Virus record (IMG/VR): IMGVR_UViG_3300030294_000005
Coordinates: 124,001-188,000 of that record
Length of the DNA: 64,000 nt
Reading direction: 5' to 3' (one strand)
Shown here: positions 8,529-62,854 of the stretch, piece by piece
How positions within the stretch are numbered: position 1 is the first letter of the stretch
Layout of the letters: each line of letters opens with the position of its first letter
Position numbers and translations under genes: made by a program
The notes under the pieces: model-generated
Seen by the model: the letters and a program-made list of their open reading frames with translations, nothing else
Databases searched by the model: none
What the model was told of the DNA's origin: nothing

Positions 8529-8552
8529 ATAATGATAAGGAGGAATAATTAT

Positions 8553-9359
8553 ATGAATAAAGAAATGCAATTATTTGAAAAGGGTAAATATAATGATAGT
8601 GTAGCATATAATAAGACCGTAATAGAAATAAGGGATGCATTCACACATGAATGTATGTTTAGAGGTTCAAATAAAGTAATACTAGCTGGATCTGCATTCA
8701 CTGCGGCAAAACATTTTAATATATCTCCATTAGCTAAAACTCCATCATATAATTCTGTATTAGGATTAGATAATACTGTATCAGAACCATTTACTGATCC
8801 TGGAATAAGAAGAGATGAGCAGGTATTTTTATTTGCTGTAGGAACTAATGGATGTGGACTTGAAAATAGTCAGGTATATGATGTAGACTATTCTAAATGG
8901 ATTAAACCAGAATTTTTAGTCCCATTTAGATATCAATTAAAAACAAATGATTTAGATCCTACTTTAAGAGATAAGTATTTTGGAAGAAAAGTATATGGAG
9001 ACAATATTCTATATTATTTTAAATCATTTGAGACTACACCAGAACTTAAGCAACAATATTCTGATGGAACTCCTATAGATGAAAATGTATATCTATCTAA
9101 TAGAGTTGATGAAATAGAATCATATGTTGAGATACAGTTAAAAGTAACTAAAGATGACTGTAGAGATTTCTTTATAGGAACTACTGGTATTAATGATGCT
9201 AAAGTAAATAGTATTTCATTATTAACAGGTTGGAAAAAGCAAATAGATGGGTATGATTATTTTCAAGATATAAGACCACTAACTGAATTACATTTTCCAA
9301 ATGAACCATTAATAGATCTTACAAAAGGTTTAGATATTATATATCAAATATATTATTGA
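8553..9359 (+). CDS. putative virion structural protein
   Basis: AGGAGG RBS before ATG 8553; late-type motif upstream; beta-rich composition. Confidence 0.5.
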   Translation: MNKEMQLFEKGKYNDSVAYNKTVIEIRDAFTHECMFRGSNKVILAGSAFTAAKHFNISPLAKTPSYNSVLGLDNTVSEPFTDPGIRRDEQVFLFAVGTNGCGLENSQVYDVDYSKWIKPEFLVPFRYQLKTNDLDPTLRDKYFGRKVYGDNILYYFKSFETTPELKQQYSDGTPIDENVYLSNRVDEIESYVEIQLKVTKDDCRDFFIGTTGINDAKVNSISLLTGWKKQIDGYDYFQDIRPLTELHFPNEPLIDLTKGLDIIYQIYY

Positions 9360-9407: not shown

Positions 9408-10625
9408 ATGAAAAGAAATGCAAAAATAATATCTAAAAAAGAAGATTTAGATTTATTATTAAATATAAAAGAAGATGATATTACATTATCTTTTATAATG
9501 GATAATTTTGGAGAATTTGATGGAAAAAAAAGATTTGATTCTTATGATGAATTAGAAATTCCAAAAGGTATGTATGGTGCTGAAGGAATTAAAAATAAAA
9601 ATGTATTTACTACTACTGTAGGAATATGGATTTTTAATAAATATTTTATTGAAAAAGATTTATTTAATATATTTAAATATATTAATAAAACTGTTGGTAA
9701 GAAATTATTCAATGAAATAAATGAAAAACTTTCATATGCAGTAATGGAAGATGATATTGAGTTAGAAGTATTAAAAAGATATTTGATGAAGACTCAAAAG
9801 TTCATGCCATTTGTATCTATACTATCTCCAAGTTATACTTTAGCTATGCTGACTTGCACTAAAGATATAGAAAAGAAAAAGAAAGAGTTATTTAAGCTGT
9901 ATGATAAGGAAGTAAAATCTGGAGACCCATTAATTATAGATAAGATTCAAACAGAACTGTTAACCTATTCTAGAGAATTATTAAAAGATGATCCATCAAT
10001 GGATACATATGATTCAGGAGCTAGAGGATCGTTTGATAATAATTTTAAGAATTTATTTATAATGAAAGGCCTAGTAAAAGATCCAGATCCTAATAAAGGA
10101 TATAATGTAGCGACTTCTAGTTTTATGACTGGTATTAAAAAAGATGAATACCATATATATGCTAATTCATTAGCAGCTGGCCCATATGCTAGAGCTAAGA
10201 AAACAGAGGTAGGAGGATATCTAGAAAAATTATTTCTTTCAGCTTATCAACATATTGTATTAGATAAGGCAGGAAGTGATTGTGGTACAGCAAGATATTT
10301 AACTGTTGATTTTTCAGAAGAGAGAATACAAGATTATATGTATTCCTATATAGTAGAAGGAAAAGAATTAGTCGAGATCACTTCTAAAAATATGGATAAA
10401 TATAAAAATAAGATTGTAAAATTAAGATTTTTCTCTTTATGTGAAGGAAAGAATACATGTAATAAATGTGCTGGTAATTCATTTTATAGATTAGGTATTA
10501 AGAATGTAGGAATGACTGCACCACAGGTTCCATCACGTTTAAAAGTATTAAGTATGAAAGGGTTTCATGACTCTTCTGAAAAGTTCGTGGAGATGGACCC
10601 TTGCAAAGCGTTTAGTATTAAATAA
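9408..10625 (+). CDS. rpoC: split RNA polymerase beta' middle fragment (probably virion RNAP)
   Basis: SGARGS, bridge-helix-like GPYARAKKTEVGGYLEK, DCGT...C...CNKCAG zinc site, trigger-loop-like Q......LSMKGFH. Confidence 0.85.
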   Translation: MKRNAKIISKKEDLDLLLNIKEDDITLSFIMDNFGEFDGKKRFDSYDELEIPKGMYGAEGIKNKNVFTTTVGIWIFNKYFIEKDLFNIFKYINKTVGKKLFNEINEKLSYAVMEDDIELEVLKRYLMKTQKFMPFVSILSPSYTLAMLTCTKDIEKKKKELFKLYDKEVKSGDPLIIDKIQTELLTYSRELLKDDPSMDTYDSGARGSFDNNFKNLFIMKGLVKDPDPNKGYNVATSSFMTGIKKDEYHIYANSLAAGPYARAKKTEVGGYLEKLFLSAYQHIVLDKAGSDCGTARYLTVDFSEERIQDYMYSYIVEGKELVEITSKNMDKYKNKIVKLRFFSLCEGKNTCNKCAGNSFYRLGIKNVGMTAPQVPSRLKVLSMKGFHDSSEKFVEMDPCKAFSIK

Positions 10626-12018: not shown

Positions 12019-12029
12019 ATAAAATTATA

Positions 12030-12065
12030 TAATACAATAGCATTTTAGCTATTGTATTATTTTTT
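12030..12065 (+). terminator. intrinsic terminator
   Basis: TAATACAATAGC/GCTATTGTATTA stem and T-run. Confidence 0.75.
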
Positions 12066-12067
12066 GG

Positions 12068-12090
12068 TTATATATTATAAATATGAATAA
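12068..12090 (+). promoter_or_regulatory. early-type promoter motif
   Basis: TTATATATTATAAATATGAATAA, identical 23-mer also at 14687. Confidence 0.65.
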
Positions 12091-12115: not shown

Positions 12116-12379
12116 ATGAAAGAAAGAATTGATAATATTATTAGTAACTCAGAAAAGGTGATAACTATACTAGCAAATATTAATTTAAATGATATGCCAG
12201 AAATAGTATCAGATAAATTAAAATTAGTGAATGTTAAAGTAACTGAAAGATTAAAATATTTAAATGATAATTATAATACCATCATATCTGATAAGTATGG
12301 TTATGATGAGTATCAGAGAATATTAGCCGAAGAAAAGTATATTAATGAATTGATACTAGTACTATCTGAATATAAATAA
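12116..12379 (+). CDS. hypothetical protein
   Basis: AAGGAAGG RBS; ORF track. Confidence 0.7.
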   Translation: MKERIDNIISNSEKVITILANINLNDMPEIVSDKLKLVNVKVTERLKYLNDNYNTIISDKYGYDEYQRILAEEKYINELILVLSEYK

Positions 12380-12404
12380 TAAACTAAGGAAGGATGATAG
12401 AAAA

Positions 12405-12983
12405 ATGTCAAAAATTTATTTATGTTTAAAATGTATGAAAATCTATGATAATGAATCTTTAGCACCATCAAAATCACCATATTATAAAGTATGTCCAGAC
12501 TTATATTGTGATAATAGAGAGATGTTTGAAATAGATGAAAATATGATTCCTATAATAATAAAATTAAATGATAAAGGATTTAAAACCAAGTTCTGTTGTT
12601 CTGGGCATGTTTTCGAACCATTAGATATTTATGTAAAATTTGATGATAATTTAATCAATAATATTAATATGTATATAAGGCTAAACCTTATGCCTAAGTT
12701 ACCAGAGTTTTTCATGATAGAAGGTGATTCAATAAGATTAAAGAAACGAGGATTAGTTAATAATGAATTTAAATATTTTACTGTAGGAAAGTATAATGAA
12801 TATATGATTAAATCATTTGATGAAATTATTGACATTAGTGATACACAGGTATATATTAATAAAATTAATTACATGAATGACTGTATACAATCACTTTATA
12901 ATTGGATAGATGAAATATGGGATATATCTAAATATAAAGATATAGTTAATGAAAAGGGGTTTATAATATATGAAAAACTTTAG
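12405..12983 (+). CDS. hypothetical zinc-binding protein
   Basis: CLKC...CPDLYC and KTKFCCSGH motifs. Confidence 0.7.
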   Translation: MSKIYLCLKCMKIYDNESLAPSKSPYYKVCPDLYCDNREMFEIDENMIPIIIKLNDKGFKTKFCCSGHVFEPLDIYVKFDDNLINNINMYIRLNLMPKLPEFFMIEGDSIRLKKRGLVNNEFKYFTVGKYNEYMIKSFDEIIDISDTQVYINKINYMNDCIQSLYNWIDEIWDISKYKDIVNEKGFIIYEKL

Positions 12984-13464
12984 ATTAAAAGAATTAAGAA
13001 TTAAGAATAAACTTACACAAGAAAAATTAGGAGAATTAGTAGGACTAACTAAGCAAGCTATATCAAGATTAGAAATGAATAAAAATAAATACACTGATAA
13101 TAATTTAATAAAAAAATTAGCAGTTGTTTTAAATTCAACACCTGAATACATATTAGGTCTTAGAGATAGTAGTATACAAGAAAATATGATTAATAACCCA
13201 CCTATATATAGTAGTAATAAATCATTTGATAGTAGATATGGATGTAAATGTGGTAATTTAATGGGACGTATTCATAGTGGTATTATATGCGAAAATTGTA
13301 ATACTGCAGTAAAATTTATTGAAGAAGAATATGATGATGATTTTTTAAATATAGTAATTCAATGTAAAATGAAATTAAATAAAACTGATATTAATATTAT
13401 AAAAGATATTATGAAAACATTTATAAAAAATAGAAAGGGGAATAATAAAAATGAAATTGAATAA
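12970..13464 (+). CDS. XRE-family HTH regulator with an inserted copy of the RNAP beta' zinc-binding domain
   Basis: N-terminal RLKELRIKNKLTQEKLGELVGLTKQAISRLE...LAVVLNSTPEYILG; internal RYGCKCGNLMGRIHSGIICENCNT resembles 15970-16062. Confidence 0.85.
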   Translation: MKNFRLKELRIKNKLTQEKLGELVGLTKQAISRLEMNKNKYTDNNLIKKLAVVLNSTPEYILGLRDSSIQENMINNPPIYSSNKSFDSRYGCKCGNLMGRIHSGIICENCNTAVKFIEEEYDDDFLNIVIQCKMKLNKTDINIIKDIMKTFIKNRKGNNKNEIE

Positions 13465-14182
13465 GCAATTTTTTAAAAATATACTATTTAAATTTATTGA
13501 TAATTCAAAAATAGAAGATTCGTCTTCTTCAACAATACCAAATTCTAATAAAGAGTATTATGAAAATTTCAATGCATACTCTTCTTGTAATTGGCTCGAT
13601 TTTAAATCTATGATAAAAAAGTATGGATTTAAGAAAGGGCTATCTTATAAATTTATAAATATTTCTTACCATACAAAATATAAAGAAGAAGCTATTTTAT
13701 ATTATCATAAAGAAAAAGGTTTAATATTATGGGCAACATCATTCTTTGGAACTTCTTTAAATGGTGGAACTGTTTATGGCCAAGTGAAAATAAATGAAGA
13801 GAATGAATCAGATGTTGGCAAAGCTTTAGATTGCTCACATGATTCATTTGGATATTATGATAAAGAGACCCGAAGTTCTACATTAAAAGATGCAGTTTAT
13901 TTTGATATAGATGTTAGAGATGGAATGATATCTAAATTGAATATAATAGAATCCGTTGCTGATTTTCAAAGTATTTGGACAACGAAAAATAAAAGTATGA
14001 AGCCTTTTGTATATTTATCTGATTTTACTGAAAGGCAAAAAAATAAACATTTTAATTGTGCAGATTCAACAATAGATAAATTAAATAGATCATGTAAAGA
14101 GGTTAAAGATATAGTTGGAATTGAAGATTATATAGCTAGAGAAATTTATTTTAAGGAGAAGCATAATAATGAAGGATTTTAG
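13451..14182 (+). CDS. hypothetical protein
   Basis: ORF track; overlaps the upstream gene; AAGGGG RBS. Confidence 0.75.
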   Translation: MKLNKQFFKNILFKFIDNSKIEDSSSSTIPNSNKEYYENFNAYSSCNWLDFKSMIKKYGFKKGLSYKFINISYHTKYKEEAILYYHKEKGLILWATSFFGTSLNGGTVYGQVKINEENESDVGKALDCSHDSFGYYDKETRSSTLKDAVYFDIDVRDGMISKLNIIESVADFQSIWTTKNKSMKPFVYLSDFTERQKNKHFNCADSTIDKLNRSCKEVKDIVGIEDYIAREIYFKEKHNNEGF

Positions 14183-14501
14183 AGAATTATTAGAAGCCGA
14201 TATAGAAGAACAAAAATATAGACTATATAAATCTGTACGAATTGGTAAATTCGATATATCTATTCAGGGTAGTGAGAAACATTTCTGTACACCAAGACTG
14301 ACAACTAATCTTTATGAATATTCTAAAATGGAAATAGCAATATGTGAAAATGGTAAATGGATTAGTATATTAAATGATAAACGATTTAATGATTTTAATA
14401 TAAAGATAAAATGGGACGAAAGTGATCGACCTATAGCTGAATATGTTGATATCTCAGCAATACAAGCATTGTGTGATTATATTGAAAAAAATCTAATATA
14501 A
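14169..14501 (+). CDS. hypothetical protein
   Basis: AGGAG RBS; SIQGSEKHFCTPR motif. Confidence 0.75.
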   Translation: MKDFRELLEADIEEQKYRLYKSVRIGKFDISIQGSEKHFCTPRLTTNLYEYSKMEIAICENGKWISILNDKRFNDFNIKIKWDESDRPIAEYVDISAIQALCDYIEKNLI

Positions 14502-14516
14502 TAAAAAGGAGACAAT

Positions 14517-14681
14517 ATGCTAAAATGTAGATGGTGTGGAAAAGAAATAACGGAAGAGCAAAGTAAAGAATTTGAAGGAACATGTGGTCCTACCCATATG
14601 GAATCAATATGGCGTATTCAAGAAGTAGATAGGATGTTTGCTGTTATGAAAGAAGATAGAGAAAAAGTTAAAGTTATTTAA
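14517..14681 (+). CDS. small CxxC hypothetical protein (54 aa, not in ORF track)
   Basis: AAGGAG RBS; MLKCRWCGKE...TCGPTH...KVKVI*. Confidence 0.65.
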   Translation: MLKCRWCGKEITEEQSKEFEGTCGPTHMESIWRIQEVDRMFAVMKEDREKVKVI

Positions 14682-14686
14682 TTCAA

Positions 14687-14709
14687 TTATATATTATAAA
14701 TATGAATAA
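14687..14709 (+). promoter_or_regulatory. early-type promoter motif
   Basis: TTATATATTATAAATATGAATAA. Confidence 0.65.
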
Positions 14710-15293: not shown

Positions 15294-15331
15294 AATAATA
15301 CTTGCAAATTTATGCAAGTATTATTTTTTTT
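15294..15331 (+). terminator. intrinsic terminator
   Basis: AATAATACTTGCA/TGCAAGTATTATT stem and T-run. Confidence 0.75.
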
Positions 15332-15362: not shown

Positions 15363-15405
15363 ACTAAGAGATACATATTGCTATGTATCTTAATATAGTT
15401 TTAAA

Positions 15406-15428
15406 TTATATATTATAGATATGATTAA
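15406..15428 (+). promoter_or_regulatory. early-type promoter motif
   Basis: TTATATATTATAGATATGATTAA, heading the operon that contains beta'N. Confidence 0.6.
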
Positions 15429-15452: not shown

Positions 15453-15719
15453 ATGGAAAAAAAGAAAAAAGTTATTAGTTTTATTGCAAAAAATAATGAG
15501 TACATTACTGTAGGTGAATTAAAACAGCACTTAGATGATTTCGACGATCTATTACCTATAACTGTATTTAATAAAGATGGAGAAATTGAATCATTAACTA
15601 ATGGTAATATATATAAATATAATCTAAATAAAGGATTAATAGATCCATCAGATCCTCAATATGATAATTATAAAGAATCAGATGGGTTTGATAAAACTTT
15701 ATTATTATATCCAATGTAA
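15453..15719 (+). CDS. hypothetical protein
   Basis: AAGGCGG RBS; N-terminal KKKKVISF. Confidence 0.7.
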   Translation: MEKKKKVISFIAKNNEYITVGELKQHLDDFDDLLPITVFNKDGEIESLTNGNIYKYNLNKGLIDPSDPQYDNYKESDGFDKTLLLYPM

Positions 15720-15747: not shown

Positions 15748-17265
15748 ATGGGAGAATTGAATGTATCATACAGTTATCCATATAATGCAAATTATACTTA
15801 TAACGTATTATTAGAGAGGGTTAATTTAGATGAAGAAAGAGAAATGTCTATTTTAAAAGGTAGAGGTTTTGTTATAAGAAATTATCAAAGTGATATTAAG
15901 AAAGATATTAAAAATCAAGACGGAATATTTTCATCTAAATTCGGAGCTACATTGCAAGATGTAAATCCATTTGCAGATAGATATAAATGTCAATGTGGTC
16001 GTTTAACTGGACGTATTCATCATGGTATAATGTGCGAGATTTGTAATACTAAAGTAAGTTATGTTGATGATGACTTTGAATATTTCGGATGGATAGTATT
16101 GAAAGATCCATATTATATCATACATCCAAATCTATATAAAGCAATAGCTAATTTATTTGGTACTATGAATAAACAATCCGTATTAGATAGTATATTGGCT
16201 CCAAAAGATGAACGAGATCAGGATGGGTATATAGTAGAACAAGAGATTAATAAGAAAGAACCATTTGTTGGAATAGGAATACTTGCATTCAAAGAAAGAT
16301 TCGAAGAAATAATGAAATTCTATTTAAAGAAAACTCCAGGTAAGAAAGAGTATTATGAAAATATAATGAAGAATAAAGATAAAGTATTTACTCAATCTAT
16401 ACCAGTATATACAATACATTTAAGACCTTATAAAGTTTCTGGAGAGAAATTTGAATTCGAAGGAACAAATTCAACTTATAATATGATGTGTAAGTTAATG
16501 GCTTCTATAAATAATGATGAACTTAAAGTGTTTAGACAGAGGAAGTCAAAGAGCCAATTATTATATGATCTAAATGTAAAATTTCAAGATTTATATAAAG
16601 AATTAGAATTAATAATATCTGGTAAGAAAGGTTCTATACGTTCACTGTTTGGTGGTAGATATAATTTTACTTCCAGATGTGTTATAGTTCCAAATCAAAC
16701 ATTAAGAATTGATGAAGTAATAGCACCTTATGCCGCAATGGTTGAATTACTCCAACAAAGCATAATAAATATATTACAGAAATCATATAATATGAGTTAT
16801 AGTGATGCTTATAATATGTGGTTTATGTCACAGACAGAGAAAGATACTAGAATAGAAAAAATAATATTAAGTATTATTCATAATCATGATCGAGGAGTTC
16901 CTATATTACTTAATCGTAATCCTACAATAAATTATGGTTCAATAATGCAAATGTTTATAGTAGGGATTACAGATACTTATACATTAGGTATGCCCCTACA
17001 AGTATTACCTTTATTTTCTGCTGACTTTGATGGTGATGTTTTAAATATGTTGTATATTATAAATAAAACATTCTTAGAAGAGGCATTCAATAAATTAAAT
17101 CCAAGAAATGCTATGTATATTTCAAGAAATGATGGTAAATTTAATAATGCTGTTAATCATACAAAAGATCTTCTTATCAATGCTAATACATTCATAAATT
17201 TATCAAGAAAATATTATTCAAAAGAACAATTAGAATTGATAGAAAGGATAAAAGAAATGTTATAA
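15748..17265 (+). CDS. rpoC: split RNA polymerase beta' N-terminal subunit with catalytic site (probably non-virion RNAP)
   Basis: CQCG...CEIC zinc site, FGWIVL, KKGSIRSLFGGRYNFTSRCVI, LLNRNPTI, catalytic SADFDGDVLN. Confidence 0.92.
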   Translation: MGELNVSYSYPYNANYTYNVLLERVNLDEEREMSILKGRGFVIRNYQSDIKKDIKNQDGIFSSKFGATLQDVNPFADRYKCQCGRLTGRIHHGIMCEICNTKVSYVDDDFEYFGWIVLKDPYYIIHPNLYKAIANLFGTMNKQSVLDSILAPKDERDQDGYIVEQEINKKEPFVGIGILAFKERFEEIMKFYLKKTPGKKEYYENIMKNKDKVFTQSIPVYTIHLRPYKVSGEKFEFEGTNSTYNMMCKLMASINNDELKVFRQRKSKSQLLYDLNVKFQDLYKELELIISGKKGSIRSLFGGRYNFTSRCVIVPNQTLRIDEVIAPYAAMVELLQQSIINILQKSYNMSYSDAYNMWFMSQTEKDTRIEKIILSIIHNHDRGVPILLNRNPTINYGSIMQMFIVGITDTYTLGMPLQVLPLFSADFDGDVLNMLYIINKTFLEEAFNKLNPRNAMYISRNDGKFNNAVNHTKDLLINANTFINLSRKYYSKEQLELIERIKEML

Positions 17266-19845: not shown

Positions 19846-21087
19846 ATGGATGAAATAGATAAACTTTATAGCTCATTATGCATTCCCTCATCTGCAAACT
19901 CTTATGGAATTGCAATTGAATATATGAGAAATTGGTTTGTATCAAAATTTGATGTAGATTATTGGAAAGTTGTTTATGTAGATGGAAAGTTTATATTGGA
20001 TGACTTTAGAAAATTTAATCATCACGACTCTATTAAAACAATGAAACCTTCTTTATCAATTGTTCCACAAGTTACATTTGAACATGATAGAGAACGAGTA
20101 GATTTATATCAAGGAAGTTTACATCAATTAATAAATAGATCTAGAGAAGATTCAGCATTCTTTAAAGATCGTGATAAAAATATGTTTGTAAGTTTAATGA
20201 TGGAACAATTACAAATGAATTTTACATTTAGAATGAAAGTAAGTTCAAGAGCACAACAAGTAGAATTGTATAAATATATTCAAATGGCATTTAGAATAGG
20301 ATCTACACAAGGGGAATATATAGATATAGATTTTCATATCCCATATACTTTAATTTTACAATTAGCTGCTGATAGTGGATTCGAAATTATTGATGAAAAG
20401 ATAAAAAACGTATTATCTTTCGTTAAATATTTAAATGAACACTCCATACTTCCTATTTTATATAAGTATAGGAATGTAAATGGTAAGAATGAGTTCTTTA
20501 TAAGGATGCCCAATATGTATGCTCATATATCATGTCAAGATGCACCATCAGCAGATGATGGAGACCGTGAAGGTATGATATTTAATAACTTTATGATAGA
20601 TATGAATGTAATATTACAAATGCCAATGCCAAAGGCATATTCATTTTATTCATTAAAACCACCAGATATTATAAAGCATATTGATACTAATGATACTGGT
20701 AGTCCTGCTGTTATAAGTATTGAACTTATGAATTATCCAGAGAAGAATTCTAAAGGTTGGGATAAATTTATAACTACTGATTATTATGAAGAAAATATTA
20801 TTAAACCATTAGTAATAGATTTTGCTGAATTATTTGATGATAGTGAAATATTAAGAACTATAAAATATAATAATAATATTCAGATATCATCTAGTATATT
20901 TATAGATTTTATTATAAATAATAACGGGAAGATAATACCATATACAATAGATTGGAAAGAGTTAAAATTAAATACAGATACTGTAGTTATATCAGAAAAT
21001 ACTAATATAGCTATATATATAGATTTAGGATATATAAATGATACAATAATAAATTTAACAGAATTGAATGAAGATAGACTTAGATAG
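19846..21087 (+). CDS. putative virion structural protein
   Basis: 413 aa, AGGAGG RBS, late-type motif upstream; function inferred. Confidence 0.5.
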   Translation: MDEIDKLYSSLCIPSSANSYGIAIEYMRNWFVSKFDVDYWKVVYVDGKFILDDFRKFNHHDSIKTMKPSLSIVPQVTFEHDRERVDLYQGSLHQLINRSREDSAFFKDRDKNMFVSLMMEQLQMNFTFRMKVSSRAQQVELYKYIQMAFRIGSTQGEYIDIDFHIPYTLILQLAADSGFEIIDEKIKNVLSFVKYLNEHSILPILYKYRNVNGKNEFFIRMPNMYAHISCQDAPSADDGDREGMIFNNFMIDMNVILQMPMPKAYSFYSLKPPDIIKHIDTNDTGSPAVISIELMNYPEKNSKGWDKFITTDYYEENIIKPLVIDFAELFDDSEILRTIKYNNNIQISSSIFIDFIINNNGKIIPYTIDWKELKLNTDTVVISENTNIAIYIDLGYINDTIINLTELNEDRLR

Positions 21088-60670: not shown

Positions 60671-62854
60671 ATGGCAGATCCAAGTTTAATTAATAACGTT
60701 TTAGAAGCAGGAAAAAGATTAACATCAAAAGAACAAATGTTAGGTAAAGGATTGAATATGCCTTTTAACGCTCTAAATTCAGGAGCAAGAAAAATAATGT
60801 TTTCTACACAGATGGATCATCGTGTAGATTTGTTTAACCCAGAAGCCCCATTAATAAGCACGGGGTATGAAAATAGATTTGGTGAATATACATCTTCTTT
60901 TATCAAATCTGATAGTAGATATATGGTAATTGCTAAGATAGAAAAATTCTCTCATCTTCCAGGGCATCATTATTATTTAGTGTTAAAGAAGTTTGATAGT
61001 GATGAATATGAAATTATTGAGAGAGTAATGTATGAGCATGTTACTGAAGCTTACGGATATCTATATAATACAAAATATATGGATCATCTAAAGATTGGAA
61101 GTATAGTAGAAACTAATGATGTTATACGAAAAAGCACATCATATGATGAATATGATAATAGAATGGATGGGGTTAATTTAATAACAACATATCTATCTAA
61201 TGAAGATACAAAAGAAGATGGAATTGTAGTAGCAAGGTCTGTAACTGAAAAGTTAGCATGTCCATTAATTAAGACTATCCAAATAATAATCAATGATAAT
61301 GATATACCACTTAATATGTATGGCGATGATAATATATATAAAATAATGCCAGATATAGGAGAGAGCATAAAGAAGGGTATATTGTGTGCTATGAGAAGAG
61401 AGAAAAAAGAAGAATCATTATTTAATCAATCTCTTCAACATCTTCAATCATTAATGATGTCAGATGATAAGTTTATAGCAAAAGGACAAATTATAGATAT
61501 AGATGTATACTGTAATAATCCTGAGATATTAAAAGAATCATACTATGCTACACAAATAAAATATTATAGTGATAATAGTTTTAGATTTATGAATGATATT
61601 GTAAATGTTATTAAACCTATAATAGAAGATAATGTTAATAAGTGTAGTTATGAATTACAGAAAATATATTATGATTGTAAGAAGATAGTAGTAGATGGGA
61701 AGAAGTATATAAAAGATAAACCATTCTCTAATACTATAATAAATATAACTATATTAGAGAAGAGTGTATTAGCAGTAGGAGATAAGATATCTAATAGATA
61801 TGGTGGTAAAGGAGTAGTTTCTAAGATAAGAGAAGATGATCTAATGCCATTATTAAAAGATACAGGTGAGAGGGTTGAAGTAATATTTAATTCAGCAACA
61901 TGTATAAATAGAGAAAATATAGGTCAATTATTTGAGACATCGCTAAACGATATATCTAATAAATTACTTCATTATATGGAGAATGTATTAGATACAGATG
62001 AATGTAATGAGATGTATAGAGATTTGGTTTATTTAACTAATAGGGAACAAGGCGAGAAGGTAGATGAATTATTATCTAGATTATCTCCTGAAGAACAGCA
62101 TTATTTCTTTGACTCTGTAATATCAGATAGTGGCATAATGCTTAGTATGAAACCTATAAGTGATCCAATGAATATTGATATGCTGTCTGCAATATATGAT
62201 AAATTTCCTTATATAAAACAGCATAAGGTAACAGTGCCACAAAGGGATTCTAATGGTAATGTAAGATATCTAGAAACTAGAAGAAGATTGACTTGTGGAA
62301 AACAATATATCTATAGATTAAAACAATATGCTGAAGAAAAGTTTAGTGCGACTTCACTTTCTTCAACAAATATAAGAAATGAAAATAGTAGAAGCTCTGC
62401 TAAAAAATCTTATAAAACAATATTTACAAAAACTCCAATAAGATTTGGAGAAATGGAATCTGGAAACTTATTACATCTTGGTGCAGAAAATGTAGTTATT
62501 AACTTATTACTATATTCCGCATCTCCTAAAGGAAGAAGACTTGCTGAAGAATTATTAATTGGTAATCCGTTTGATATAAATGTTAAATTGGACGACCAAT
62601 CTACAAATAGAGGTGTTGAAATTCTTAATGCATATTTATTAACAATGGGATTAAGAATAGAATTTGTAAAAACACAAAAAACTAAAAAAGCACCTATTAA
62701 GTTTACACCTATTATAGTTCCAGCAAATAGAACTCCAATACGATTTGTTAATCCAGATGATAAGATGATTAAAGAGTATCTAGATAATTTTGGTAAGAAA
62801 TCAAAATCACCTATTAAATTTGTTCCAATATCATTTGTAGGAAGGACTGATTAA
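60671..62854 (+). CDS. rpoB: split RNA polymerase beta C-terminal subunit (probably non-virion RNAP)
   Basis: NSGARKIMFSTQMDH, EDGIVV, GDKISNRYGGKGVVS, NRENIGQLFE, GKQYIYRLKQ, RFGEME. Confidence 0.92.
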   Translation: MADPSLINNVLEAGKRLTSKEQMLGKGLNMPFNALNSGARKIMFSTQMDHRVDLFNPEAPLISTGYENRFGEYTSSFIKSDSRYMVIAKIEKFSHLPGHHYYLVLKKFDSDEYEIIERVMYEHVTEAYGYLYNTKYMDHLKIGSIVETNDVIRKSTSYDEYDNRMDGVNLITTYLSNEDTKEDGIVVARSVTEKLACPLIKTIQIIINDNDIPLNMYGDDNIYKIMPDIGESIKKGILCAMRREKKEESLFNQSLQHLQSLMMSDDKFIAKGQIIDIDVYCNNPEILKESYYATQIKYYSDNSFRFMNDIVNVIKPIIEDNVNKCSYELQKIYYDCKKIVVDGKKYIKDKPFSNTIINITILEKSVLAVGDKISNRYGGKGVVSKIREDDLMPLLKDTGERVEVIFNSATCINRENIGQLFETSLNDISNKLLHYMENVLDTDECNEMYRDLVYLTNREQGEKVDELLSRLSPEEQHYFFDSVISDSGIMLSMKPISDPMNIDMLSAIYDKFPYIKQHKVTVPQRDSNGNVRYLETRRRLTCGKQYIYRLKQYAEEKFSATSLSSTNIRNENSRSSAKKSYKTIFTKTPIRFGEMESGNLLHLGAENVVINLLLYSASPKGRRLAEELLIGNPFDINVKLDDQSTNRGVEILNAYLLTMGLRIEFVKTQKTKKAPIKFTPIIVPANRTPIRFVNPDDKMIKEYLDNFGKKSKSPIKFVPISFVGRTD

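What the first reader, a model, noticed from the sequence alone, without database searches (positions are those of the whole stretch)
12970..13464. XRE helix-turn-helix regulator carrying a captured copy of the phage RNAP beta' zinc-binding domain
Seen: between the HTH and the C-terminal helices sits FDSRYGCKCGNLMGRIHSGIICENCNTAV (13225-13317). It matches FADRYKCQCGRLTGRIHHGIMCEICNTKV of the beta'N subunit (15970-16062) at 19 of 29 residues, including all four Cys, and the DNA is visibly homologous (e.g. GGACGTATTCAT and TGTAATACT shared). Both genes lie in early-motif operons 2.7 kb apart. Known: the beta' ZBD of multisubunit RNAPs contacts promoter DNA, sigma-type factors, antiterminators and the RNA exit region. 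Inference: a DNA-targeted RNAP-surface mimic. It could titrate or recruit the phage sigma-like subunit, time the early-to-late switch, or act as a decoy for a host defence that senses RNAP. I know of no described HTH-ZBD fusion of this kind.
Basis: partly seen in the sequence, partly recalled or inferred. Interest (0 to 1): 0.82.

Follow-up and report, generated by a model that had tools for sequence, protein, structure and literature searches.

The report
Phage regulator carrying copied polymerase zinc ribbon
An uncultivated giant phage has a small early gene in which an ordinary DNA-binding (helix-turn-helix) domain is joined to a diverged copy of the zinc-binding knob of the phage's own RNA polymerase; the chimera is real and unique, but it occurs in one phage genotype only and nothing yet shows that the copied knob still does a polymerase-related job.

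Summary
ORF 12970-13464 (164 aa) has an XRE-type HTH (residues 5-62). Residues 67-125 are homologous to residues 48-110 of the phage's non-virion RNA polymerase beta'N subunit (15748-17265): BLASTP E 3e-14, and a 118-bp DNA patch at 76% identity. All four Cys and both Gly of the beta' zinc-binding domain (ZBD) are kept. Both genes follow AR9-type early promoter motifs.

The phage's own beta'N is the closest donor. Ten related jumbo phages lack the fusion, and the gene sits in a variable island between conserved polymerase genes. An exhaustive search of 1.84 billion protein representatives found no orthologue, and a pattern survey of IMG/VR found no second HTH-ZBD fusion. All 13 contigs carrying it are at least 99.98% identical, so there is no population signal.

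dN roughly equals dS between the two copies. However, the ORF is intact and the fold-defining residues are retained, which argues against a dead remnant.

Most likely it is a lineage-specific early DNA-binding regulator that co-opted the zinc ribbon as a structural or effector module. The "RNAP-surface decoy" idea is possible but untested. Interest is moderate.

The parts
12029..12060 (+). Intrinsic-terminator-like hairpin with a T-run, ending the upstream transcription unit
   Evidence: 13-bp stem, T tail; sequence.
12067..12086 (+). AR9-type early (virion-RNAP) promoter motif GTTATATATTATAAATATGA, with the predicted TSS at G 12085. It heads the six-gene unit that contains the HTH-ZBD gene.
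   Evidence: The motif occurs 11 times in the window against 1.8 expected, all on the + strand. It fits the AR9 early consensus AAATATATATTAT-(6N)-G (PMC5312081). No transcript data exist here.
12116..14681 (+). Predicted early operon of six small ORFs (87, 192, 164, 243, 110 and 54 aa). All except the HTH-ZBD gene have no assignable function.
   Evidence: The ORFs are tightly packed or overlapping, each with an SD-like sequence.
12970..13464 (+). HTH-ZBD chimeric gene, 164 aa
   Evidence: The identical gene is on 13 contigs.
12982..13155 (+). XRE/Cro-CI type helix-turn-helix domain (residues 5-62)
   Evidence: Pfam HTH_3 E 4.8e-10, 39.8 bits against a cut-off of 23. PHROG 8 and 3, NCBIfam RstR/DicA/HipB and PADLOC CapH/C-protein all match the HTH only and below their family cut-offs.
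13168..13344 (+). Segment homologous to beta'N residues 48-110 (residues 67-125 of the fusion). Relative to beta'N it carries an 8-codon deletion upstream of the ribbon and a 3-codon insertion in the acidic tail.
   Evidence: BLASTP E 3e-14; alignments A2 and A3. Residues 58-82 have AF2 pLDDT below 50, so this part is a likely flexible linker.
13218..13334 (+). Patch with DNA-level homology to 15962-16079 (90/118, 76%). It contains the ribbon ligands Cys92, Cys94, Cys107 and Cys110 (13243-13245, 13249-13251, 13288-13290, 13297-13299).
   Evidence: AF2 pLDDT is about 90 for residues 90-120.
13336..13449 (+). Two predicted C-terminal amphipathic helices (residues 123-134 and 138-160), with no homologue anywhere
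   Evidence: AF2, pLDDT about 72. No match in the window or in the databases.
14686..14705 (+). Second copy of the early promoter motif (exact match to the search pattern)
15294..15325 (+). Terminator-like hairpin upstream of the beta'N transcription unit
15405..15424 (+). Third copy of the early promoter motif (exact match to the search pattern), heading the unit 15453-15719 plus beta'N
15748..17265 (+). Non-virion RNAP beta'N subunit (505 aa), the donor gene
   Evidence: PF00623 E 5.5e-14; PHROG 2987 E 5.9e-62; AR9 nvRNAP beta' 7s00_d E 1.2e-41 and phiKZ gp55 7ogp_A E 5e-21. Annotated hits are nvRNAP beta' genes. The DFDGD motif is present.
15889..16077 (+). Donor segment: beta'N residues 48-110, comprising the pre-ribbon strand region, the ZBD and the acidic DDDF tail

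Best explanation
This is a real, lineage-restricted early gene. It arose when about 180 bp of the phage's own non-virion RNAP beta'N gene (the ZBD and its short flanks) was copied in frame into, or next to, an XRE-type HTH gene, within a fast-changing island of small early genes.

The product is a three-part protein:
- an N-terminal sequence-specific HTH;
- a flexible linker of about 20 residues;
- an intact four-Cys zinc ribbon followed by two amphipathic helices.

I think it most likely acts as an ordinary early transcription regulator of the repressor/controller type. The HTH would read DNA. The ribbon plus helices would form the non-DNA-reading half, serving for folding, spacing, oligomerisation or an auxiliary contact. 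In other words, the ZBD was co-opted as a ready-made stable module and is not kept as a faithful replica of the polymerase surface.

Shown: the domain composition, the homology and its direction, the donor, the promoter motif, and the restriction to one lineage. Inferred: expression, zinc binding, DNA binding, and the role of the ribbon.
For: - Domains and homology.
- The phage's own beta'N is the closest donor. Nucleotide identity is 81/108 against 59-70/108 for seven relatives. Codons are identical at 17 of 19 identical residues. Nucleotide identity exceeds the expectation from codon usage (P = 4e-4). The two copies share states H, I, E and N that are not the commonest residue among 12 other beta'N.
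- Variable island: relatives keep the flanking core genes, but the 5.1-kb interval is replaced by 0.7-2.4 kb of other ORFs.
- Selection for an intact product: a 164-codon ORF in this 26% G+C genome stays open in only 1% of neutral simulations at 0.12 substitutions per site, and in 0.015% at 0.24. All six family-invariant residues, plus the near-invariant Y and V, are kept. Identity to the donor is 10/13 at family-conserved positions against 9/23 at variable ones (Fisher P = 0.04), and the three changes at conserved positions are V>I and D>E.
- Signals: an SD sequence, overlapping neighbour ORFs, and an AR9-type early promoter.
- Structure: the ribbon is predicted with confidence (pLDDT about 90) and the linker as disordered. 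The ribbon superposes locally on the ZBDs of phiKZ gp55 and E. coli beta' (rmsd 1.5-3 A over 30 residues).
- Precedent: HTH_3 plus zinc-ribbon architectures exist in Bacillota (HTH_3 + PF12674).
- Against strict mimicry: substitutions fall on surface-type, family-variable positions, with dN at or above dS.
Against: - There is no orthologue, so no direct test of purifying selection. All 13 contigs are one genotype.
- dN/dS of about 1 between the copies (0.40/0.38 overall, 0.32/0.18 in the core) also fits relaxed constraint.
- Retention of the invariant residues is only weakly improbable if few changes fell in this copy (P = 0.08 at 0.12 substitutions per site).
- The HTH part of the AF2 model is poor because that part had no alignment.
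- No operator, binding partner or expression data were found.
- The ribbon also keeps nearly all residues conserved across beta'N, so continued use of the original interaction surface is not excluded.
Confidence: 0.45

Rival explanations
1. RNAP-surface mimic or decoy. The free ZBD keeps the interaction surface of the nvRNAP beta'N ZBD. Tethered to DNA by the HTH, it binds whatever normally docks on that knob: the sigma-4-like C-terminal domain of the promoter-specificity subunit, nascent RNA, or a host factor. This would delay or redirect late transcription, or absorb a host factor aimed at the polymerase.
For: - The ribbon keeps almost every residue conserved across jumbo-phage beta'N (R-Y before Cys1, L, G-R-I-H, G-I, T-x-V), with the acidic tail kept in character (DDD to EEE).
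- It is co-expressed with nvRNAP subunit genes from the same early promoter type.
- The flexible linker would let the ribbon reach a partner.
- In bacteria the beta' ZBD is a documented docking site. SspA bridges the ZBD and sigma70 region 4 (PMC7515715). HK022 putRNA binds the ZBD (PMC9378689).
- In phiKZ the ZBD lies in a region that the authors consider key for promoter recognition (PMC7618050).
Against: - No partner has been identified. No homologue of the phiKZ gp68 or AR9 gp226 specificity subunit was detected among the five window proteins searched against solved structures.
- Two semi-conserved basic residues are lost in the copy (K>G before Cys1, K>A in T-K-V).
- dN is at or above dS relative to the donor.
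- No related phage needs such a factor.
- A 30-residue knob removed from the clamp may not reproduce a composite interface.
Confidence: 0.2
2. A young, effectively neutral chimeric ORF: a by-product of illegitimate recombination in a hyper-plastic early-gene island. It may be transcribed because of where it lies, but it has no selected function.
For: - It is private to one genotype.
- It sits in an interval that is replaced wholesale in relatives.
- dN/dS between the copies is about 1.
- beta'N genes of this phage group are frequent targets of insertions and splits, so stray exon copies are plausible.
Against: - The copy is 24% diverged at the DNA level, so it is not brand new. Yet the 164-codon ORF has no stop or frameshift in a genome where neutral drift closes such an ORF quickly.
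- All zinc ligands and fold-defining Gly, Y and V residues are kept.
- The SD sequence and translationally coupled neighbours are intact.
Confidence: 0.2
3. Gene conversion, not domain capture. A pre-existing HTH-plus-zinc-ribbon regulator (an architecture known in Bacillota) had its own ribbon overwritten by a short conversion tract from beta'N. The resemblance to the polymerase would then be incidental to function.
For: - HTH_3 + Zn_ribbon_2 proteins exist, and MqsA-type proteins combine a zinc ribbon with an XRE HTH.
- DNA-level homology is confined to a short 118-bp patch.
Against: - Protein homology extends about 50 nt upstream of the DNA patch, into a non-ribbon segment of beta'N (residues 67-83 against 48-64). 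A ribbon-to-ribbon conversion would not explain this.
- No ancestor or paralogue of the HTH or the C-terminal parts exists in the window, in relatives or in the databases.
- No Pfam ribbon family matches.
Confidence: 0.1

Closest known systems
XRE / Cro-CI family helix-turn-helix regulators (Pfam HTH_3, PF01381), e.g. phage repressors RstR and DicA, CapH, and restriction-modification controller proteins
   Same: An N-terminal HTH_3 domain above Pfam's gathering score. The protein is small. The layout is an N-terminal HTH followed by a non-DNA-reading C-terminal half, encoded in a phage early region.
   Different: The C-terminal half is not any known repressor dimerisation, peptidase or sensor domain; it is a copy of an RNA polymerase element. 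Every specific family model matches only the HTH, and below its curated cut-off.
Zinc-binding domain of multisubunit RNAP beta' (the E. coli beta' Cys70/72/85/88 knob; the N-terminal Zn site of phiKZ nvRNAP gp55)
   Same: The same ligand spacing, Y-x-C-x-C-G-x8-G-x2-C-x2-C. It shows direct sequence and DNA homology to the phage's own beta'N and aligns to residues 67-94 of a bacterial beta'. The AF2 ribbon superposes locally on 8que_A and 6n57_J.
   Different: It is detached from the clamp, lid, zipper and catalytic domains. It is fused to a DNA-binding domain. About 45% of residues differ from the donor, and two semi-conserved basic residues are lost.
HTH-plus-zinc-ribbon regulators (HTH_3 + Zn_ribbon_2 PF12674 proteins of Bacillota; MqsA antitoxins, TIGR03830)
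   Same: The general idea of an XRE-type HTH combined with a four-Cys ribbon in one small protein.
   Different: The ribbons show no sequence relationship: Pfam finds neither PF12674 nor MqsA's ribbon here. MqsA has the ribbon at the N-terminus. This ribbon has a traceable origin in a polymerase.
Factors that act at the beta' ZBD / sigma region 4 corner of RNAP (SspA, lambda Q, HK022 putRNA, T4 AsiA as a sigma-4 binder)
   Same: Only a functional analogy with the decoy rival: regulation through the ZBD neighbourhood.
   Different: Those factors bind the ZBD or sigma-4, whereas this protein is itself a ZBD copy. There is no homology and no evidence of binding.
Other non-canonical ZBD carriers found here: P0005 (ZBD fused to a beta' region-G-like segment) and P0003 (two tandem ZBD-like ribbons)
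   Same: A jumbo-phage-type beta' ZBD sequence outside a normal beta'N protein.
   Different: Neither has an HTH or any recognised DNA-binding domain. Each is known from a single contig.

Membership tests
XRE/Cro-CI HTH regulators (PF01381 HTH_3) | Sequence match to the HTH_3 profile above the curated gathering score | tested here: met
   39.8 bits against a cut-off of 23, residues 6-61, covering the full profile 1-55
XRE/Cro-CI HTH regulators (PF01381 HTH_3) | Five-helix bundle fold with the recognition helix | tested here: inconclusive
   The AF2 alignment had no rows for this part, so residues 2-36 were modelled as one long helix with pLDDT 61-73. ESM Atlas nearest neighbours are all HTH_3/HTH_26 clusters, but with scores of 0.84 or below.
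XRE/Cro-CI HTH regulators (PF01381 HTH_3) | Sequence-specific DNA binding, usually as a dimer on a palindromic operator | not testable with these tools
   No operator could be identified. The inverted repeats seen in the intergenic regions look like terminators.
RNAP beta' zinc-binding domain | Four Cys ligands with the spacing C-x-C-G-x8-G-x2-C-x2-C, preceded by Y-x | tested here: met
   C92, C94, G95, G104, C107 and C110 are invariant across 17 sequences. The codon pattern hits only this site and beta'N in the window.
RNAP beta' zinc-binding domain | Homology to beta' and not to generic ribbons | tested here: met
   BLASTP E 3e-14 to the phage's own beta'N; PHROG 2987 E 2.5e-4. Hits in the exhaustive HMMER search are beta'N ZBDs. 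The only PDB hit is a bacterial beta' ZBD, which is weak on its own (E 0.66).
RNAP beta' zinc-binding domain | Part of the beta' clamp next to the RNA-exit channel of a polymerase | tested here: not met
   The protein has no other beta' segment. Homology ends at DDDF, before the conserved GW..L strand. It is therefore a ZBD-derived module and not a polymerase subunit.
RNAP beta' zinc-binding domain | Binds one zinc ion | not testable with these tools
   Inferred from the retained ligands and the confident AF2 ribbon.
Non-virion RNAP beta'N of phiKZ/AR9-type jumbo phages (the donor gene 15748-17265) | Rpb1 domain 2 with the DFDGD catalytic loop, a split-subunit size of about 450-510 aa, and best matches to nvRNAP beta' chains | tested here: met
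   PF00623; 7s00_d E 1.2e-41 and 7ogp_A E 5e-21. Annotated hits are nvRNAP beta' genes.
AR9-type early (virion-RNAP) promoters | Consensus AAATATATATTAT-(6N)-G with transcription starting at the G | tested here: inconclusive
   The sequence fits at 12067, 14686 and 15405, and the motif is 6-fold over-represented, on the + strand only (consensus from PMC5312081). The transcription start and timing cannot be tested here.
HTH_3 + Zn_ribbon_2 (PF12674) regulators / MqsA antitoxins | Match to the family's own ribbon profile | tested here: not met
   PF12674 is not reported at E up to 1. The MqsA models match only the HTH.

The most novel reading that the evidence does not exclude
The protein is a DNA-tethered decoy of the non-virion polymerase's zinc knob. 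Early in infection it occupies the partner that normally docks on the beta'N ZBD (the sigma-4-like domain of the promoter-specificity subunit, or a nascent or host RNA or protein). This would set the timing or targets of late transcription. It would be the first natural case of a regulator built from a piece of the polymerase it regulates.
Probability: 0.15. Interest if true: 0.8.

Novelty: new variant of a known kind. Interest (0 to 1): 0.45.

Why it matters
If the ribbon is functional, this is a clean natural example of domain capture from an essential enzyme into a regulator. The donor, the boundaries and the rough age can all be read from one genome.

It also offers a small, soluble, naturally excised jumbo-phage beta' ZBD. 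That could be used to ask what this knob binds in phiKZ/AR9-type non-virion polymerases, whose promoter recognition is still poorly understood. AR9 lacks the ZBD, while phiKZ and this phage keep it.

If it is only a neutral chimera, it still documents how new small early genes arise in jumbo phages. In either case it is a single-genotype curiosity in an uncultivated phage, so its immediate impact is limited.

Tried and rejected
- **Orthologue searches, all negative apart from the protein itself.** Word-index search of 5.8e9 proteins with the whole protein and with the ribbon region. IMG/VR and JGI metagenome scans. Phage GenBank tblastn, which gave HTH-only hits. Exhaustive HMMER on 1.84e9 representatives.
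- **Mistyped pattern.** One IMG/VR scan was wasted on a pattern with one N too many. I corrected it after testing on the window.
- **Population dN/dS.** Impossible: all contigs are at least 99.98% identical, with no differences inside the gene.
- **P0004 (beta'N N-terminus + LytTR).** I considered this as a second fusion of a DNA-binding domain with a ZBD. I rejected it as a probable assembly chimera: a single 914-bp contig, with G+C jumping from 0.41 to 0.51 at the junction.
- **Short closed ZBD-bearing ORFs in L036, L052 and L104.** I considered these as free ZBD proteins. They are N-terminal pieces of interrupted beta'N genes.
- **Function clues from neighbours.** None came from Pfam, PHROGs, NCBIfam, PADLOC or the PDB.
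- **Rfam.** No RNA family was found in the window or in the interrupted beta'N locus L021.
- **Paralogues.** None were found for the HTH or the C-terminal helices in the window.
- **Foldseek.** E-values are not significant because the confident part of the model is only about 30 residues long. The alignment used for AF2 came from beta'N proteins, so that match is partly circular.
- **Sigma-70 promoter scan.** It is uninformative in this AT-rich DNA: 69 sites found against 70 expected.
Full report
**What is there.** The window is part of a 236-kb uncultivated jumbo-phage contig, IMGVR_UViG_3300030294_000005, with about 25% G+C. ORF 12970..13464 (+, 164 aa) starts at an ATG 10 nt downstream of AAAGGGG. 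It overlaps both neighbouring ORFs by 14 nt and ends at TAA. Residues 5-62 are an XRE-type HTH: Pfam HTH_3 scores 39.8 bits against a cut-off of 23. PHROGs, NCBIfam and PADLOC models of phage repressors, antitoxins and controller proteins match this part only, and below their family cut-offs.

Residues 67-125 align with residues 48-110 of the 505-aa protein encoded at 15748..17265. The alignment is 29/67 identical, E 3e-14.

At the DNA level, 13218-13334 matches 15962-16079 at 90/118, E 2e-20. A codon pattern for Y-x-C-x-C-G-x8-G-x2-C-x2-C occurs exactly twice in the window and in none of 100 shuffles.

**It is a beta' ZBD, not a generic ribbon.**
- The jumbo-phage RNAP beta' profile PHROG 2987 matches residues 80-122, E 2.5e-4.
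- The only PDB sequence hit is residues 67-94 of a bacterial beta' ([26 protein letters not shown]). This is weak on its own.
- An exhaustive HMMER search of 1.84e9 cluster representatives with residues 66-164 gave 11 hits at E up to 1e-3. Apart from the protein itself and two long proteins that match the lysine/asparagine-rich tail, all are ZBDs of about 500-aa jumbo-phage beta'N proteins or ZBD-like ribbons.
- No Pfam ribbon family scores.
- In a 17-sequence alignment, C92, C94, G95, G104, C107 and C110 are invariant, and Y and V nearly so.

**It is not an assembly artefact.** The identical gene lies on 13 contigs from JGI, ENA and Logan assemblies.

**The donor and the setting.** The 505-aa protein has Rpb1 domain 2 and the DFDGD loop. 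Its best solved relatives are the AR9 non-virion RNAP beta' (7s00_d, E 1.2e-41) and phiKZ gp55 (7ogp_A, E 5e-21). Its hits in annotated phages are nvRNAP beta' genes. It is therefore the nvRNAP beta'N subunit.

The AR9 alignment starts only after the ZBD. This agrees with the published statement that phiKZ gp55 has a four-Cys N-terminal Zn domain and the AR9 enzyme lacks it, and that this difference lies in a region key for promoter recognition (PMC7618050). Other polymerase pieces lie nearby. The protein at 9408-10625 resembles cellular beta' around residues 714-905. The protein at 60671-62854 is the nvRNAP beta C-half (7s00_C, E 7.5e-92).

The motif ATTATATATTATARATATGA occurs 11 times against 1.8 expected, always on the + strand. 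It fits the experimentally defined AR9 early (virion-RNAP) promoter AAATATATATTAT-(6N)-G (PMC5312081). Copies at 12067, 14686 and 15405, together with terminator-like hairpins at 12029-12060 and 15294-15325, define two transcription units:
- a six-gene unit, 12116-14681, that contains the fusion;
- a separate unit for beta'N.

Early timing itself is inferred.

**Origin and age.** Ten related jumbo phages, whose beta'N is 40-54% identical, were fetched with 10-kb flanks. None has a second ZBD copy or the HTH gene. They keep the flanking core genes (homologues of 8532-9359, 9408-10625, beta'N and 19846-21087). However, the 5.1-kb interval holding twelve small ORFs here is replaced by 0.7-2.4 kb of unrelated ORFs, including an HNH-like gene in L015. 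The fusion therefore sits in a variable island.

The phage's own beta'N is the closest donor:
- Nucleotide identity is 81/108 in the core, against 59-70/108 for seven relatives.
- Codons are identical at 17 of 19 identical residues.
- Nucleotide identity exceeds what the two protein sequences and the genome's codon usage would give (75 observed against 65.5 +/- 2.7 expected; P = 4e-4).
- The two copies share states (H in GRIH, I, E, N in CNT) that are not the commonest residue among 12 other beta'N.

A complete IMG/VR scan with an AT-codon version of the pattern found exactly two sites on this contig. A third, closer donor is therefore unlikely, though not excluded.

Divergence is substantial. 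Over all 56 aligned codons dS is 0.38 and dN is 0.40. In the 33-codon core dS is 0.18 and dN is 0.32. Reading the alignment by eye, both copies have changed since the duplication. The fused copy keeps K, N and K, which are the commonest residues at those positions among the other beta'N proteins, where beta'N now has Q, R and S. The fused copy has itself changed A>D, D>S, K>G, K>A, V>I and DDD>EEE.

**Is it under selection?** All 13 contigs are at least 99.98% identical and have no difference inside the gene, so there is no population signal. A dN/dS of about 1 between the copies is compatible with relaxed constraint.

Three observations argue against a dead remnant:
- Simulated neutral substitution at the genome's base composition leaves the 164-codon ORF open in only 1% of trials at 0.12 substitutions per site, and in 0.015% at 0.24.
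- The eight fold-defining residues are all kept (P = 0.08 to 0.003 over the same range).
- Identity to the donor is 10/13 at positions conserved in other beta'N, and the three changes are conservative. At variable positions it is 9/23 (Fisher P = 0.04).

These tests are modest, and they rest on the assumption that the whole ORF is as old as the patch.

**Structure.** AF2 was run with an alignment that covers only the ribbon part. It gives pLDDT of about 90 for residues 90-120, below 50 for residues 58-82 (the linker), and about 72 for two C-terminal helices at 123-134 and 138-160. The HTH is modelled badly for lack of alignment rows. Foldseek E-values are not significant, but apart from one spurious full-length alignment (rmsd 21 A) the best local matches are the ZBDs of phiKZ gp55 (8que_A, rmsd 1.5 A over 30 residues) and of bacterial beta' chains. 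This is partly circular, because the alignment came from beta'N proteins. The ESM Atlas finds only HTH families. Among structural neighbours it shows an HTH_3 + Zn_ribbon_2 architecture in Bacillota.

**Is the fusion seen anywhere else?** No. Of 156 ORFs carrying the pattern:
- 128 are beta'-like;
- the rest are beta' N-termini cut by locus ends, N-terminal pieces of interrupted beta'N genes, Cys-rich low-complexity ORFs, or unrelated small ribbons;
- only this phage has an HTH in front of the ribbon.

Two other non-canonical carriers turned up in the HMMER search:
- P0005 has a ZBD joined directly to a segment homologous to the C-terminal 125 residues of the 9408-10625 protein (E 6e-12).
- P0003 has two tandem ZBD-like ribbons.

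Neither has a DNA-binding domain. P0004 (beta'N N-terminus + LytTR) is probably a chimeric 914-bp contig.

**Mechanism.**
- *Shown:* an intact ORF with translation signals behind an AR9-type early promoter motif, encoding an HTH, a linker, a beta'-derived four-Cys ribbon and two helices. It is derived from the phage's own nvRNAP beta'N and is restricted to one lineage.
- *Inferred (my best reading, about 0.45):* it is an early XRE-type regulator in which the ribbon and helices make up the non-DNA-reading half (fold, spacing, oligomerisation or an auxiliary contact). The ZBD was co-opted as a stable module.
- *Decoy idea (about 0.2):* it remains possible, because the ribbon keeps nearly all beta'N-conserved residues, is co-expressed with polymerase subunits, and the ZBD is a known docking site in bacteria (SspA, putRNA). 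Against it, no partner is known, two semi-conserved basic residues are lost, and related phages do without it.
- *Neutral chimera (about 0.2) and gene conversion of an older HTH-ribbon protein (about 0.1):* these are the other rivals.

**Comparison and novelty.** The protein is a member of the XRE HTH superfamily by the profile test. It is not a polymerase subunit, because it lacks every beta' element except the ZBD, and it does not match known HTH-ribbon families. Combining an XRE HTH with a zinc ribbon is a known kind of architecture. A ribbon traceably copied from the RNAP beta' subunit is, as far as these searches reach, undescribed. I rate it a new variant of a known kind. Interest is moderate: it is unique and mechanistically suggestive, but it is a singleton in an uncultivated phage with no evidence of function.

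Noticed in passing
L021:10001-12395 (and L022); L052:4773-5255 (-); L104:1172-1675; L036:1825-2706: beta'N genes of related jumbo phages are often interrupted or split. In L021 and L022 the gene matches in three pieces separated by about 450-nt inserts. In L052, L104 and L036, closed ORFs of 161-294 aa carry only the N-terminal, ZBD-containing part. No Rfam intron family was detected in L021.
   Followed up: partly
L025:5427-6554 (protein P0005, 375 aa): This is a 'mini beta-prime'. A jumbo-phage-type ZBD is fused directly to a segment homologous to the C-terminal 125 residues of the window protein 9408-10625 (the beta' CxxxxxxCxxC region), E 6e-12. It has no catalytic DFDGD domain. It lies on a phage-like contig next to a divergent DnaB helicase.
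   Followed up: partly
L026:1980-3818 (protein P0003, 612 aa): This protein has two tandem ZBD-like ribbons (RYRCECG...CRYCNTKV and RYRCGCG...CKKCYTRI), an acidic tail and no Pfam domain.
   Followed up: no
L024:70-771 (protein P0004, 233 aa): A beta'N N-terminus with its ZBD is joined to a LytTR DNA-binding domain on a single 914-bp contig. G+C jumps from 0.41 to 0.51 at the junction, so it is probably an assembly chimera and not a second fusion of a DNA-binding domain with a ZBD.
   Followed up: yes
window 3638, 12067, 14686, 15405, 41189, 50813, 53426, 60592 (+ strand): An AR9-type early promoter motif (TATATATTAT-N6-G) recurs on the + strand in front of gene blocks, often just after a terminator-like hairpin. 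This suggests that the virion RNAP of this uncultivated phage recognises the same promoter type as that of Bacillus phage AR9.
   Followed up: partly
window 9408-10625 and 60671-62854: Two more RNAP pieces lie in the window. A 405-aa protein matches cellular beta' around residues 714-905 but matches no AR9 or phiKZ nvRNAP chain, so it is probably a virion-RNAP beta' fragment. A 727-aa protein is the nvRNAP beta C-half (7s00_C, E 7.5e-92). This phage's nvRNAP is AR9-like yet keeps the ZBD that AR9 has lost.
   Followed up: partly
window 12405-12983 and 14517-14681: Two other ORFs in the same early operon also begin with CxxC...C-type zinc-ribbon-like motifs (MSKIYLCLKC...CPDLYC and MLKCRWCGKE...). 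They have no detectable relatives beyond a weak PHROG hit.
   Followed up: no
L125 (ORF of 122 aa, - strand, ZBD at residue about 80): A closed 122-aa ORF on a 16.6-kb viral contig carries a cellular-type beta' ZBD ([23 protein letters not shown]). It may be another free or split N-terminal beta' fragment.
   Followed up: no
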